DNA from: Neoconidiobolus thromboides FSU 785
Lineage: Eukaryota; Fungi; Entomophthoromycota
Direction of reading: 5' to 3'
Length of the DNA stretch: 64,000 nt
Assembly (NCBI GenBank): GCA_025603075.1
Contig: MU626312.1
Location: 1-64,000 of the forward strand
The notes under the pieces are model-generated. The model was not told the DNA's origin. It was given only the letters and a program-made list of their open reading frames with translations, and ran no database searches. The translations under genes and the position numbers were made by a program. This document shows, in pieces, positions 7,558 to 27,401 of the stretch (the stretch's first letter is position 1; every line of letters starts with the position of its first letter).

Positions 7558-8909
7558 TTAGATAAGTTCAGCAACATTAAGAGGCATCTCTTCTACAGTA
7601 GTGTTATAGAATTGTTCGATATCACGGAGCATACGAACATCATCAGTAGTGATAAAGTTGATAGATACACCTTTACGACCGAAACGACCACCACGACCAA
7701 TACGATGGATATAATTTTCACGGTTAGATGGAAGATCGTAGTTAATAACTAAGGAAACTTGTTGAACATCAATACCACGAGCTAGAAGATCGGTGGCAAT
7801 AAGAACACGGGAAGAACCGGAACGGAACTCTTTCATAACAACTTCACGCTCTTTTTGTTCCATATCACCATGGATGGCGGAAACAGTGAACTCACGGGAC
7901 TTAAGTTTTTCAGTGAGCCACTCAACCTTTCTTCTTGAGTTACAAAAAATAACAGCTTGAGTAACAGTAATAGTTTCATAAAGGTCACAAAGAGTATCGA
8001 GTTTCCATTCTTCTTTTTCACAAGAGATATAGAATTGTTTAATACCTTCTAAAGTTAATTCATCACGTTTAACTAAAATACGGATAGGATCACGCATAAA
8101 CTTTTGAGTAACTTCAAGGACATCAGTAGGCATGGTAGCAGAAAGTAAAACTGCTTGTGTGGTGCTTGGAAGTCTTTGGAAAATTTCATAAATTTGATCC
8201 TTGAAACCGCGGGACAACATTTCATCAGCTTCATCAAGAACAAACATCTTAAGTTTATCAGTGTTGAGGTACCCACGGTTAATCATATCGAATACACGAC
8301 CTGGAGTACCGACAACGATTTGAACACCATTTGCAAGGCTAGCAGCATCATCACGAACACTGGTGCCACCAATACATCCGTAAATGTTAAGGCTCATGAA
8401 ATCAGAAATAGCAACAACAACTTTTTGAATTTGGGAAGCTAATTCACGAGTTGGTGCAAGAATTAAAGCTTGAACAGCCTTAACTTCTGGGTCTATTTTT
8501 TGTAAGACTGAAATGGAGAAAGTACCAGTTTTACCAGTACCAGATTGAGCTTGAGCAATAACATCTCTTCCACTAACAATTGGCAAAATGGCACGAGATT
8601 GAATGGCAGAAGGACGTTCAAAACTTTAGTTTTTATTAGTATCAATTGGCTATAAAATAATACAAAAGTTCTTACCCATAGGCGTAGATACCACGGAGAA
8701 GATCTTCTTTAAGGTTCATGTTATCGAAATTGTCAACAACCTCGTTATGGTTGGACTAAAAAATTAATACACTGCTATAAAACTTAATAAATAGTATTAC
8801 TTCAATTTCAACTTCCTTAATGTCATTAAGTTGATCTTTAGTAGCTTCAGTACTAAAAATAGAGTTAGTTTTGTAAATAAAATAAGCCTTTTTACAATTA
8901 CCTGCTCAT
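7558..8909 (-). CDS. TIF1: Translation initiation factor eIF4A (DEAD-box helicase)
   Basis: Motifs [23 protein letters not shown] and [13 protein letters not shown], with the eIF4A C-terminus [11 protein letters not shown]. Three short 5' exons start at ATG 8909. Confidence 0.97.
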
Positions 8910-9621
8910 TTTATTCAATTTCTTTCAATTTTTAAAGAAAGGCAAAGGAATCAATACTCTTGAATAATTTTTATCTTTGAACTCGGAGCAAGAGCTACAC
9001 ATAATAAACAAGTATTATTGGCTAACTATCAGCAAATGAATTCAACATTGGGGTTAAGTTAGCCTTAATTGGCTTACAAGCTAATTATGGGTCTTTGAAT
9101 AAAGCTTAACATTATAAAATAAGCAGTCTTATTCTAAATTCCAACCAATTGATGGAAATATTTAAAAGGTTTAAGCACAAATTAGAGAATCAAAACTTAC
9201 ATGTTCTAAAAAATAATGCTGAAATCATAGAAACATTAATGTTCATAATATATTATAGTCTTCTGATAAAAGCACTATTTTATTATTTTTAACACAAAGA
9301 ATATACAAAGATCTTGCTTGGTATTAACTAGGACATCAACTTAAAAAGAATCTCATTTAACGAGAATTGTTGCTTTTAAGGTCGACTTTTCTTGTTCTAA
9401 TTAATTTCACAAACTAGACTACTATTGGGTAAGTTAATATAGATACTAATTTACTGAATGACATTTTAGTTTAAATCTTTCCATACCTCAAAAATCTAGG
9501 ACAATTATCCCACTTAAAAATCTGTCAAAATTGCCCAACCTGCAAAATAAGCGTCAGGAATTGAACCAATAAAATAAAATTAAATCTAAGTTGAACAAAA
9601 AATCTATTTTAAATCCATAGC

Positions 9622-11425
9622 ATGAGCAAAAAGAATGATTATAATAAAGATTATTCATTGGGAAAAGAAATTGAAGCAACAACGTTAGGAAGTGATTATG
9701 GTGAAGTGTCAAGTGTATATCATAAAGAAAGGAGTTTTATTCCTTCACCTTACCCCAATAATAAAATAATTGCTTATAAATCGCCTTTTACTAGTATACT
9801 TATAAAAAGGAGAGAGGAAAAGTTTCCTGAATTGAGCCAAACAAATAAAGAGAATCTAGAGGAAAGAAAAGAAGGGTCAGCCAGAAACATAAGTTCTTTA
9901 AGCGAAATCATACTAAATACAAAAAAAACTGGATCCTATTCAAGCAAAGACTTAGAATTCCAGCTTAGGAATACTTTATTAGAAAATAATAAACACAAGG
10001 AGAAAACAAGGAAGCGTGATGATGATAAAAATGAGGAATCCAGAAGAAATAAATCTATGAACCATTTATTAGGGAAGTCATTAGATCATGACAATAGTAT
10101 AGAACTAGAAAGTTTTGTAAAGGCCATAAGTAATGGTTCACTTGAAATAATTGGGGAAGAAAACAATGATTTAGAAGATGCGTTCAACGATATTTCTAAA
10201 CATGAGTACTTTTTAAAAAATAATCCAAAATCAGTTAATAAAGATAGCATGGAATTTAATAGTATAGTTAAAGCTATATCCAAAGGTTCACTAAAAATTA
10301 GTAAAGAAGTATCATTCAGTCATAAAAATAAGGTAAATTTGGTTTAATTATAGTAAGTTTAATAATAGCTTGTAGCAAAAAAATAGGGAGAAAGCCCATT
10401 TGAGTTTAAATAAAAGACAGCAGAAGCCAAAAATAATAATAGTAAAAAAGAGTTCAATTATATCGCTTTTAAGGTTTGCAAAAAATGTTGAGCATTTGGA
10501 TGATGGATTTTTTATAGCTAGGAAAGATGAAGACAAATTTATAATCGATCGGTTTGATCCAGGATCCATAGTATATACTACGACAAACGGCCATGATGAA
10601 AATCATAGGTGCCCTACTTATCTTTTAGAAGAAGATATTCCATTTACAATTAAGTTCAATAAGATGGATTCTATAAATGAAAATAATTATTTTCCAGAAT
10701 TCTATATAAAATTACAGGATCACCAAATGGAACTAACATGTATTTGGAAAGAGATGGATGTTACTGTTGATTTTTACAAAGTCAATAAAGAAATTACGAG
10801 TAAGATTGGGTGCTCAAAGTATGAAGATAGTCTTATTGATGAAAATGAAGATCATGGGTTTGTAATTAATGAGAATGAGAACATAATATTGATAAATAAA
10901 AATGAGACTAAAGAATATAAGATAAACGGTATATGGTATGATAAACAAGTAAAATTAGAAGATTTATATTATAATATAATTGGATTTTTAAAAGAATTTT
11001 ATCCAAAAGTTAAAGACGGAGAATTTTATATAATAATTAAAGAAAATGATGAATGGCAAGTATTTAAAGCTGTTTTCTTGGTAATTAAGATAATTTATTA
11101 AATAAAGCATATACTTATTTTATTTTAGGTACGTTCGTTTAAAATACTAAGCTATAAAGATGAATATCAAGTTTTAATTGATAGTATACAAAATGATGTT
11201 ATATTTACACCTAGAACAATTGCAGACAAATCTGAAGAAGGAACGAAGGATTATAGTAAAATGAGCTCAAAAGAATTAGTTAATATTATTGAAGAACAGC
11301 AATCGATAATTAAAAGGTTACAGAATGAACTAAAAGAGCTGAGGGTAGACGCCAATAATGATACCACAAAAGTTAAATCACCAACTACTGCGGTGCTTTC
11401 ACTAAATAATAAGTCATTATGTTGA
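9622..11425 (+). CDS. STIL N-terminal-domain protein with C-terminal coiled coil (STIL/SAS-5/Ana2-like)
   Basis: Introns 10333-10375 and 11081-11128 join three in-frame segments. The middle exon matches human STIL-N in collinear blocks: HLS..PKIII, RFAK, IIDRFDPG, PTYLLEED, GIW, GEFYII. The 3' end is uncertain because of a possible extra intron ending at 11460. Confidence 0.7.
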
Positions 11426-25160: not shown

Positions 25161-27401
25161 TTAATTTTTATGAGATTTTAATAACTTATCAAGTTCATTA
25201 ATCTCCTCAGGAGTTAATTCGATGGACCTATTAGATTCTTTATCAAATTTAAGTGGTACCATCCCAGTTGTACCATCAAATCGATTCTTTTTAACATCAA
25301 TATATCTCAAGTCATTTGGTGCATTTTGTAATATCATTACATTATCAGCTTCTTGTGTAATTTTAGCTGATCCAAAAATAGATCCAACATCTAAAAATTC
25401 TCTATCATCTTTTCTAGGATGAACTACTAATGTTATATGAACATTATATTCTGTTGCAAACTTTCGAAATACACTTAAAGCATCTTCTTGGATTTCATAT
25501 CTTTCAAATCCTTTACCTAATCCTGAAGTCATAAATTGTAAATTATCTATTAATATATGTTGAACATCATGAGCATAAACAGCATGTTCCATAGCATCAA
25601 TTACTTCTTTTACCTTAGTACTACCAAAGAATTTCATAAAATATAATGGAAGCTAATAAACATAATAAGAATAGTTAATATGTAATATTTTAATAATAAA
25701 TTTATAGTAATTACCTGTTGGAATTTTTCCGCCCAATGATTATATTCTTCTACCTCAGTACCAATTGTTTTACCAGCATATTGAAATAGCATTTTTTTAG
25801 CTAGTCTAGTATTAGATATTTCAAAACTACCCCACATAGTTGATACACCAGAAGAACAAAAATCTAAAGATAATTGACTTAAAAAAGTAGTTTTACCCAT
25901 CCCAGTAGGTCCTGAAAAAATAGTTAATTCACCTGGTCTGAAACCTTTAATAATTTGATTTAAAGATGGAAAATTTTTAGTTGGTATGCCTTTAACTTGA
26001 TCTGCATACATAATTTCTAATAATACGGAATCTTTTAATTTTTCAAAATCAACTACTTTAGAATGAGTTATTAATTTGGATTCTTTAATAAATTCTTTTA
26101 AGTTATAACCTTTAGCTAAACAATCATAAGCGGATCTTACTTTTTCTGAATTAGCTGCTTCATTTTTAACTAAATAACATCGATCAAATCCTAATTTACG
26201 TGCAAATAATTGAGCTGCATTTTGACCTTGAACATCCCCATCAAACCATAAATAAATGCGTTTAAATCTTGCTAATAGTGGCATATATTCAATTGGTAAT
26301 TGATAAATATTTTTTGGTAAAGAAACTGAAGGTATATTTGTAGCTTGATAAACTGACATAGCATCTGCTTCTGTTGGAGTCAAACATATTTCTTCACATT
26401 CATTAGATATTAAATGATAGCCAAAAAATCCAGGCTCGGATTTTGTTTTTGGCTCAAAGGTAACAAATTTCTCAGTTGGAAATGTAGAGGCTTTAAATGA
26501 TACAATTTTATATTGATTTTCATTTTCATCACTGGATGATAAACTGGTTCTTGGAAATATAGCACATGGTACCTTTTCTTTTTTGCTCACTTTAGCTGGA
26601 TCATGAGAAGCTTCAAAATTGGAAAATGAAATCCAGTAATCTTTTAATGTCTTTTCATCTAATGGACTATTTTCGCCACATAATATATTATAAATAAATT
26701 TGTTCTCTTCTATATCTTTGTATTCAAATTGTAACAACTCAGGTACTACTAACTGCCCTAAATTGTTTGGTATTGAAGGCGGTTTCTTTAATTTAGTTCT
26801 GTTCTCTTTAGTTAACATTTTAAATTGTTCCCAATTCCCGTGGGTACGACAAGAATAACAAAAGTAATTACCATGGTCTGGTTTTAAAAATGTTTTTGTA
26901 GCTGATATAGAAGAATCATTATGACAGTTGGGGCAAGTAACTAAAAAGTATTTTTCACTATTTTGAACAGATATTTGACCCATGTTTGATAAAAACTCAG
27001 ATATCTGTTTTGTTGTTACTGTATTCGGATTATTACTTGGAAATGAAAAATCTTCTGGTTTATTATTTTGTGGTACTTTGTTAATTGTACTTGATTTTGG
27101 CTTCATATTTTCTTTCTTAGTCCCCTTTGATTTATCTGTTGTCGCATAAAAATCGATAGGCTCAACCTTCTTTATTTCAGGTTTAACTTTTAACTCATTT
27201 AATTGACTTAGGCTACTATGATATCCTTGAAATCGTACATTTATTTCATTATTTGGTACTATTATTAAAATTGATGATTTAATATATAATATAATTTATT
27301 AAGTTGTAATTACCTGACTTAATAGCACTAAAGTTATTGTTATTATTAATTCTTTTTATTACTTTATCTAGTTTTATTGGTATTTTATTTAATTTATACA
27401 T
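25161..27401 (-). CDS. TWNK: Twinkle mitochondrial primase-helicase (T7 gp4-like)
   Basis: SF4 helicase motifs SGPTGMGKTT, WGSFEI, ILIDNLQFM, VVHPRK, GSAKITQEADN and KKNRFDG. The N-terminal part has a CxxC...CxxC zinc finger and a TOPRIM-like region. A basic N-terminal extension starts at ATG 27401. Confidence 0.93.

What the first reader, a model, noticed from the sequence alone, without database searches (positions are those of the whole stretch)
9622..11425. STIL (centriole-duplication factor) N-domain homolog in an apparently non-flagellated fungus
Seen: the spliced protein contains AHLSLNKRQQKPKIIIVKKSSIISLLRFAK...DEDKFIIDRFDPG...PTYLLEEDIPF...HGFVINENENIILI...INGIWY...GEFYIII. These blocks are collinear with human STIL as I recall it: [25 protein letters not shown]...DEDEEGVTLTVDRFDPG...PTASLPGDFLIP...[15 protein letters not shown]...LVGIWL...GNFIIVL. 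Downstream are FTPRTI (cf. the STIL CPAP-binding FSPRPIPSP) and a coiled coil LVNIIEEQQSIIKRLQNELKEL, placed like the PLK4-binding coil. No C-terminal STAN domain is evident. Established: STIL/Ana2/SAS-5 acts with PLK4, SAS-6 and CPAP in centriole assembly; Zoopagomycota lack flagella, but Basidiobolus and Coemansia have microtubule-ring nucleus-associated organelles. Inference: a relic or repurposed centriole module at the spindle pole, or an independent function of the STIL-N fold.
Basis: partly seen in the sequence, partly recalled or inferred. Interest (0 to 1): 0.85.

Follow-up and report, generated by a model that had tools for sequence, protein, structure and literature searches.

The report
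Diverged STIL-N-like gene, centriole-less fungus

Summary
The three-exon gene (9622-10332, 10376-11080, 11129-11425, + strand) is real, and RNA contigs from three runs skip both introns exactly. It encodes the 570-aa hypothetical protein K502DRAFT_341480 of Neoconidiobolus thromboides FSU 785 (Entomophthorales, no flagellum known).

Used as bait, they hit the solved Trichoplax STIL N-terminal domain (PDB 5OI9) and zebrafish STIL peptides.

Against the real Trichoplax sequence the fungal protein gives two collinear local matches:
- IDRFDPG...PT...D, shuffle p about 0.002.
- GFV-IN..NIILI..GIWYD, extending to DG..F.I, shuffle p about 0.001.

The two scores are uncorrelated, so the product is about 1e-6.

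Every standard test fails or is impossible:
- Pfam STIL_N gives no hit.
- phmmer against PDB gives no hit.
- No relatives appear among 1.84 billion representative proteins.
- AlphaFold2 and ESMFold models are unusable (pLDDT 33 and 0.34).

The CPAP-binding motif PRxxPxP is not met. The coiled coil is generic. There is no room for a STAN motif.

Verdict: probably (about 0.6) a very diverged, truncated STIL-N-domain protein. It is not a canonical STIL/Ana2 member, and a spindle-pole role is pure inference. A separate unchecked note from this scan reports a SAS-4/CPAP-like gene elsewhere in this genome.

The parts
9622..10332 (+). Exon 1 (codons 1-237). It begins at the first ATG after an in-frame TAA at 9610-9612 and encodes the N-terminal extension, which is rich in Ser, Lys, Glu and Asn.
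10333..10375 (+). Intron 1, 43 nt, GT..AG.
   Evidence: Skipped in RNA contigs of X5, X6 and X7.
10376..11080 (+). Exon 2 (codons 238-472), the bulk of the STIL-N-like domain.
   Evidence: 100% identical to P0001 238-472.
11081..11128 (+). Intron 2, 48 nt, GT..AG.
   Evidence: Skipped in RNA contigs of X5, X6 and X7.
11129..11425 (+). Exon 3 (codons 473-570 plus the TGA stop): end of the domain, linker, coiled coil and short tail.
10114..10299 (+). Duplicated 12-residue motif in the N-terminal extension: FVKAISNGSLEI (res 165-176) and IVKAISKGSLKI (res 215-226).
   Evidence: Also noted by the scan as s1-064000.
10394..11212 (+). Putative STIL-N-like domain, res ~244-500 (intron 2 lies inside this span).
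   Evidence: Boundaries inferred from the matched blocks. No confident model exists.
10523..10639 (+). Block 1 (res 287-325), KDEDKFI-IDRFDPG...PT...D. It matches 5oi9_A 81-118 and includes the exact heptapeptide IDRFDPG (10544-10564).
   Evidence: BLASTP 23.9 bits, E 3e-4. Smith-Waterman shuffle p 0.0016-0.0027.
10856..11038 (+). Block 2 (res 398-435, extendable to 458), GFV-IN..NIILI..NGIWYD..(DGEFYIII). It matches 5oi9_A 231-271 (up to ~300).
   Evidence: Smith-Waterman shuffle p 0.0003-0.001. Two-sequence HMM gives 4.2 bits, empirical p 0.0076. The best natural null in the window scores 39 against 48.
11204..11221 (+). It lacks the defining prolines.
   Evidence: real zebrafish STIL: LSPRPSPNPHP.
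11270..11353 (+). Single short coiled coil, res 520-547, with about four heptads.
   Evidence: It is the best heptad window of the whole protein. AF2 gives a helix at 519-545 with pLDDT ~50-56. PDB hits are generic coiled coils only.

Best explanation
This is a real, transcribed, spliced gene under purifying selection, and it encodes a 570-aa protein with three parts. (1) A 243-residue, probably disordered extension rich in Ser, Lys, Glu and Asn, carrying a duplicated 12-residue motif. (2) A ~255-residue domain (res ~244-500) that is most likely an extremely diverged STIL N-terminal domain. In animals that domain is a protein-binding module made of two MPN/JAB-like half-domains (PMC5928214). 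(3) One ~28-residue coiled coil followed by a 23-residue tail. Shown here: the gene model, its expression, the host identity, the two collinear STIL-like blocks, and the absence of a PRxxPxP motif and of any room for a STAN motif. Inferred: the protein is a truncated descendant of the opisthokont STIL gene that outlived the loss of centrioles. It can no longer bridge SAS-6 and CPAP in the canonical way. It probably acts as a self-associating adaptor, with the coil giving oligomers and the STIL-N-like domain giving a partner-binding surface. Its cellular site is unknown; a microtubule-organising centre is one guess.
For: Gene model and expression: one search shows both introns spliced in three RNA runs. 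pN/pS is 0.16 over 12 differences from a near-identical strain. Host. Block 1 against real Trichoplax STIL (5oi9_A): 13/32 identities including IDRFDPG, BLASTP E 3e-4, shuffle p ~0.002. Block 2: the best Smith-Waterman alignment falls exactly at the predicted collinear position, p 0.0003-0.001. The two scores are uncorrelated in 12,000 shuffles, and no shuffle reached the summed score. Order and spacing fit: 111 aa between blocks here against 150 in Trichoplax. With the human piece MAFFT also aligns HLS / PK+3 aliphatic / R.AK upstream of DRFDPG. The Pfam miss is partly explained: the 404-column STIL_N model gives the 83-aa Trichoplax piece 61.6 bits, but short isolated motifs pay a large local-entry cost (the cost argument is my inference). 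Literature: the STIL orthogroup has so far been reported only in flagellated fungi (PMC13358043). Centriole-assembly genes were reported absent from non-chytrid fungi (PMC6559791). Gradual, delayed loss of protist genes in zygomycetes is documented (PMC10406608).
Against: No Pfam STIL_N hit at E<=10 for the whole protein or for any of 12 sub-pieces. phmmer of the protein against all PDB sequences, which include 5OI9, finds nothing at E<=10. BLASTP misses block 2. The two-sequence HMM gives only 4.2 bits. The 70 residues between the blocks show no similarity (p 0.1-0.2). No relative of any kind turned up among 1.84e9 representative proteins (the one other hit is a bacterial repeat protein), among 5.8e9 clusters, or in metagenome contigs. 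An anciently retained gene would be expected to have orthologues in sister lineages. No fold evidence: ESMFold pLDDT 0.34, AF2 pLDDT 32.7. Shuffled sequences also understate chance similarity between real beta-rich proteins.
Confidence: 0.6

Rival explanations
1. Chance resemblance: a fast-evolving, lineage-specific orphan protein (structured region plus coiled coil) whose few STIL-like motifs are coincidental. The first reader picked it out precisely because those motifs looked familiar.
For: All standard homology searches are negative. The protein has orphan status. The middle of the 'domain' is not similar to STIL. Each block alone reaches only p ~1e-3. CR2 and STAN are absent.
Against: There are two independent blocks in the right order and at plausible spacing. 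One is an exact 7-mer in the most conserved STIL motif. The product of the p-values is ~1e-6, and no shuffle out of 12,000 reached the summed score. The best natural null in 9,669 aa of same-composition ORFs scored 39 against 48.
Confidence: 0.27
2. A generic MPN/JAB-like interaction domain followed by a coiled coil (an architecture like Abraxas or BRCC36-type adaptors) that is not specifically descended from STIL. The shared pattern would then reflect the common fold.
For: The STIL NTD is itself built of two MPN-like halves (PMC5928214). The pattern beta-strand / helix / FFxxx / strand-DxFxP and the G-[IW]-W-Y-like strand recall MPN domains; this comparison rests on my own knowledge and was not tested.
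Against: No Pfam MPN/JAB family hit at E<=10. No PDB MPN protein hit. IDRFDPG is a STIL-specific motif, not an MPN one.
Confidence: 0.1
3. A fragment of an animal STIL gene acquired horizontally from an arthropod host by this insect pathogen.
For: The host fungus infects insects. The gene is an orphan among fungi.
Against: Similarity to animal STIL is far too low for a recent transfer. Base composition (~28% GC) and the 43-48 nt introns are typical of the surrounding fungal genes. The gene lies in a 115 kb contig among ordinary fungal genes.
Confidence: 0.02

Closest known systems
STIL N-terminal domain (Pfam PF15253; Trichoplax adhaerens STIL 1-348, PDB 5OI9/5OID)
   Same: Two collinear sequence blocks match: IDRFDPG...PT...D and G[FY]V.IN..N[IL][IL]L[IV]..GIW.D..DG..F.I. 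With the human piece there is also the upstream HLS / PK-aliphatic strand / R.AK helix pattern. The domain is followed soon after by a short coiled coil.
   Different: About 255 residues instead of ~350. It is not detected by the Pfam model or by phmmer. The inter-block region is unrelated. A 243-residue extension precedes it, whereas the STIL NTD is N-terminal. The CEP85-contact Leu (human L64) is not clearly kept; Arg67 aligns only with a one-residue indel.
STIL/Ana2/SAS-5 centriole-duplication factors
   Same: A short central coiled coil and, if the homology is real, the STIL-type N-domain.
   Different: There is no STAN motif: the protein ends 23 residues after the coil. There is no PRxxPxP CPAP/SAS-4-binding motif. 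The host has no known centrioles or flagella. At 570 aa it is far shorter than human STIL (~1,290 aa, from my own knowledge).
Chytrid STIL orthologues (flagellated fungi; 8 proteins, all with STIL_N, in PMC13358043)
   Same: They are fungal proteins with a STIL-type N-domain.
   Different: Those are recognised by Pfam and occur only in flagellated lineages. This one is not recognised and sits in a non-flagellated lineage. No chytrid sequence could be fetched for direct comparison.
MPN-domain plus coiled-coil adaptors (e.g. Abraxas/ABRO1 type) and the ATG7 N-terminal domain
   Same: Fold-level kinship of the STIL NTD with MPN domains and with the ATG7 NTD (PMC5928214), and a domain-then-coil layout.
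   Different: No sequence or profile match to any MPN or ATG7_N family.

Membership tests
STIL/Ana2/SAS-5 | C-terminal STAN motif that binds SAS-6 | tested here: not met
   The protein ends at residue 570, 23 residues after the coil (520-547), so there is no room for a STAN motif, which I recall as roughly 90 residues long.
STIL/Ana2/SAS-5 | Central coiled coil (self-association; PLK4 binding in STIL) | tested here: inconclusive
   A four-heptad coil is present (AF2 helix 519-545 at low confidence). It has only generic coiled-coil similarity in PDB and no STIL or Ana2 coil hit.
STIL/Ana2/SAS-5 | PRxxPxP (CR2) motif that binds the CPAP/SAS-4 G-box | tested here: not met
   Real zebrafish STIL peptides 4ld3_B and 4bxr_C read LSPRPSPNPHP. 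The candidate reads FTPRTIADK, so only PR is shared.
STIL_N (PF15253) | Score above the Pfam gathering threshold (27 bits) | tested here: not met
   No STIL_N hit at E<=10 for the whole protein, the three exon products or 12 sub-pieces. An 83-aa Trichoplax piece scores 61.6 bits in the same tool.
STIL_N (PF15253) | Significant pairwise similarity to a solved STIL NTD (5OI9) | tested here: inconclusive
   phmmer finds no hit. BLASTP block 1 gives E 3e-4. Smith-Waterman shuffles give p ~0.002 and ~0.001 for two collinear blocks, with a product of ~1e-6. The middle region is not significant.
STIL_N (PF15253) | Fold: two MPN/JAB-like open beta-barrel subdomains, ATG7-NTD-like overall | not testable with these tools
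   No homologues are available for an alignment. Single-sequence AF2 gives pLDDT 32.7 and the ESM Atlas model 0.34, so a fold search would be meaningless.
Centriole-assembly module | Co-occurrence with SAS-6, PLK4, CPAP, CEP135 and delta/epsilon-tubulin in the same genome | not testable with these tools
   Only this window is readable. An unchecked scan note (s1-062685) reports a SAS-4/CPAP-like gene elsewhere in the genome.
MPN/JAB superfamily | Match to any MPN/JAB Pfam family or solved MPN protein | tested here: not met
   No such hit at E<=10.

The most novel reading that the evidence does not exclude
Part of the centriole-duplication machinery outlived the centriole. A truncated STIL (N-domain plus oligomerising coil, without the SAS-6 and CPAP links) would have been kept for some 650 million years in Entomophthorales. 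It would now work in assembly or duplication of the acentriolar nucleus-associated microtubule-organising centre, possibly together with the SAS-4/CPAP-like gene noted elsewhere in this genome.
Probability: 0.15. Interest if true: 0.85.

Novelty: new variant of a known kind. Interest (0 to 1): 0.55.

Why it matters
Centriole-assembly proteins are held to be absent from all fungi except the flagellated ones (PMC6559791). The latest survey of 184 fungal proteomes lists STIL as specific to flagellated fungi (PMC13358043). A STIL-derived protein in a centriole-less zygomycete would give a molecular handle on how the centriolar centrosome was converted into a spindle pole body or nucleus-associated organelle. 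It would also point to a centriole-independent job for the STIL N-domain, which has a second conserved surface patch with no known partner (PMC5928214). If the resemblance is only chance, this is one more orphan gene.

Tried and rejected
- Pfam on whole protein, exon products and short pieces: no STIL_N and no MPN family hit.
- phmmer of exon 2 against 1.84e9 representatives: only the protein itself and a spurious bacterial repeat protein with 13 stretches.
- Word-indexed homologue search with the protein: itself only. The same search with a profile of the protein plus a recalled STIL piece: itself only, so no STIL sequences could be fetched that way.
- Last homologue search, using a recalled human STIL piece: only two human-like genomic exon fragments (P0003, P0004). 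These were not pursued further.
- Metagenome contig scan: nothing.
- ESM Atlas feature search: phage sliding clamps at non-informative scores, a composition artefact.
- Single-sequence AlphaFold2 on res 225-510 and 440-570: pLDDT 32.7 and 44.3, so no fold search was run.
- BLASTP of block 2: no hit, so Smith-Waterman was needed.
- An N-terminal human STIL piece did not hit 5OI9, so the AHLS/PK-strand block could be compared only with a recalled human string.
- Cell-cycle promoter boxes (MCB, E2F, SCB) upstream of the gene: none.
- HGT from an insect host was rejected on composition, introns and low similarity.

Full report
**What is there.** Reading the window gives a three-exon gene on the + strand: 9622-10332, 10376-11080 and 11129-11425. 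RNA contigs from three runs (X5, X6, X7) skip exactly 43 nt and 48 nt, with GT..AG ends, at the two proposed introns. The DNA run X1 is collinear with the window. The spliced product is 570 aa and is letter-for-letter the NCBI protein 'hypothetical protein K502DRAFT_341480 [Neoconidiobolus thromboides FSU 785]'. The organism belongs to Entomophthorales, a group with no flagellated stage, which I state from established knowledge. A near-identical strain in runs X6/X7 differs at 12 coding positions, 7 synonymous and 5 not. That gives pN/pS of 0.16, so this is a coding gene under purifying selection. The window has ~27% GC throughout and holds ordinary fungal neighbours (MBOAT, eIF4A, a Twinkle-like helicase, an amino-acid transporter).

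**Anatomy.**
- Residues 1-243 are 49% Ser, Lys, Glu and Asn and contain a duplicated 12-mer, FVKAISNGSLEI / IVKAISKGSLKI.
- Residues ~244-500 are hydrophobic-patterned and hold every STIL-like block.
- FTPRTI lies at 498-503.
- The best heptad window of the whole protein is 520-547. AlphaFold2 draws one helix at 519-545, at low confidence.
- The protein ends 23 residues after the coil.

They hit the crystal-structure sequence of the Trichoplax adhaerens STIL N-terminal domain (5oi9_A; Liu et al. 2018, PMC5928214).
- Residues 40-122: E 5.7e-8.
- Residues 138-216: E 3.1e-6.
- Residues 227-313: E 5.4e-24.
- Residues 295-323: E 0.16, a weak match.

A CR2 piece hit zebrafish STIL peptides 4ld3_B and 4bxr_C. 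Two database fragments annotated PF15253 contain the recalled string around YLTMDETRK...PLVG. The recalled strings are therefore essentially correct. The printed alignments also gave me real Trichoplax and zebrafish sequence to test against.

**Tests against real STIL.**
- Block 1. BLASTP of residues 238-500 against Trichoplax 40-122 gives 23.9 bits, E 3e-4, 13/32 identities (IDRFDPG, then G, H, PT, D). Smith-Waterman with 12,000 composition-preserving shuffles gives p 0.0016-0.0019, and 0.002-0.0027 with local 20-residue shuffles. With the heptapeptide masked, nothing correct remains.
- Block 2. BLASTP finds nothing. The best Smith-Waterman alignment to Trichoplax 227-313 nevertheless falls exactly where collinearity predicts. 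Candidate 398-435 aligns with 231-271 (G[FY]V-IN, N[IL][IL]L[IV], K, GIW.D, Y), p 0.0003-0.001. With softer gaps it extends to DGE--FYIII against DGSTGFILVL.
- Independence of block 2. Several of its identities (V-IN, the D after GIW, DG) are shared with Trichoplax but not with the human strings.
- Weaker or control results. A two-sequence HMM (Trichoplax plus recalled human) gives only 4.2 bits, empirical p 0.0076. In 9,669 aa of stop-free stretches from the same window the best score is 39 against 48, and the reversed candidate scores 29.
- Combining the blocks. The two block scores are uncorrelated (r about 0). No shuffle reached their sum, and the product of the two p-values is about 1e-6. 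A Gumbel fit to the summed score gives a more conservative 1.6e-4.
- Between the blocks. Candidate ~326-397 against Trichoplax 138-216 shows no significant similarity (p 0.1-0.2). There are 111 residues between the blocks here and 150 in Trichoplax.

**Tests that failed or could not be done.**
- Pfam STIL_N does not appear at E<=10 for the protein, its exon products or twelve sub-pieces. The 83-aa Trichoplax piece gets 61.6 bits in the same tool. I attribute part of this to the cost a 404-column local model charges for short isolated matches. That is my inference, not a result.
- phmmer of the protein against all PDB sequences, 5OI9 included, finds nothing at E<=10.
- phmmer of exon 2 against 1.84 billion representative proteins finds only itself and a spurious bacterial repeat protein.
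- The word-indexed search of 5.8 billion clusters and a metagenome scan find only itself or nothing.
- With no homologues there is no alignment, and single-sequence models are unusable: ESM Atlas pLDDT 0.34 and AlphaFold2 32.7. No fold comparison with 5OI9 was possible.

**The other claimed STIL features.** Real zebrafish CR2 reads LSPRPSPNPHP, and the defining feature is PRxxPxP. The candidate reads FTPRTIADK, so only PR survives. The F and I that match human STIL are not conserved even in zebrafish. The motif is not met, although its position just after the domain is STIL-like. The coil gives only generic coiled-coil hits. There is no room for a STAN motif. The protein is therefore not a member of the STIL/Ana2/SAS-5 family as defined by its centriole-building interactions. 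At most it carries the STIL N-domain plus a coil.

**Weighing.** The prior that any one orphan gene of a centriole-less fungus is a STIL relic is very low, roughly 1e-5. A chance probability of about 1e-6 to 1e-5 for two ordered blocks, one of them an exact 7-mer in the most conserved STIL motif, gives posterior odds from about even to strongly in favour. Two things pull that down. Orphan status is also awkward for a gene supposedly retained since the flagellum was lost about 660-680 Ma (PMC7865070). I put homology to the STIL N-domain at about 0.6, chance at about 0.27, and a generic MPN-like domain at about 0.1.

**How it probably works.** In animals the STIL NTD is a monomeric protein-binding module. 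Its subdomain-1 patch binds the CEP85 coiled coil, and a second conserved patch has no known partner (PMC5928214). The coil mediates self-association and PLK4 binding; STAN binds SAS-6 and CR2 binds CPAP. Those last roles I state from established knowledge. The fungal protein keeps, at most, the binding module and an oligomerising coil, and adds a long disordered Ser/Lys-rich arm. The likeliest mechanism is therefore a self-associating adaptor that brings an unknown partner into an assembly. It is not a cartwheel builder. Placement at the spindle pole or nucleus-associated organelle is inference only. No cell-cycle promoter boxes were found.

**Novelty.** Published surveys place centriole-assembly genes only in flagellated fungi (PMC6559791). 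The 2026 atlas of 184 fungal proteomes lists the STIL orthogroup as specific to flagellated fungi: 8 proteins, all with STIL_N (PMC13358043). The database entry for this protein carries no Pfam domain. If the homology is real, this is a new, truncated variant of a known family in an unexpected host. It would fit the 'delayed loss' picture for zygomycetes (PMC10406608). An unchecked note from this scan reports a SAS-4/CPAP-like gene elsewhere in the genome, and the two findings should be evaluated together.

Noticed in passing
window 25161-27401 (-): An ORF with DnaB_C and AAA_25 helicase hits, plus weak CHC2 zinc-ribbon and Toprim hits. This is a Twinkle-type primase-helicase, unusual for a fungus. 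The scan also noted it as s1-062981.
   Followed up: no
window 10114-10149 and 10264-10299 (+): A duplicated 12-residue motif, FVKAISNGSLEI / IVKAISKGSLKI, lies in the disordered N-terminal extension of the same protein. Its function is unknown.
   Followed up: partly
window 10523-10549 and 11156-11182 (+): A 27-nt direct repeat at 78% identity encodes KDEDKFIID (just before RFDPG) and KDEYQVLID near the end of the domain. It could echo the internal duplication of the two STIL NTD halves, or be chance.
   Followed up: no
window 9429-9469 (+): A 41-nt GTAAGT...TTTTAG stretch with an ACTAAT branch-like site lies in the 5' leader and looks like this genome's short introns. RNA depth there is too low to tell (sequence).
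   Followed up: no
run X10 (organism E): A 2025 run of another labelled organism holds about 10% of the sampled 31-mers of this gene. It could be a low-coverage sample of the same species or a relative with conserved stretches.
   Followed up: no
window 7558-8909 (-): An eIF4A-type DEAD-box helicase lies immediately upstream, divergently oriented. It would be a useful synteny anchor when looking for orthologues of the STIL-like gene in related genomes.
   Followed up: no
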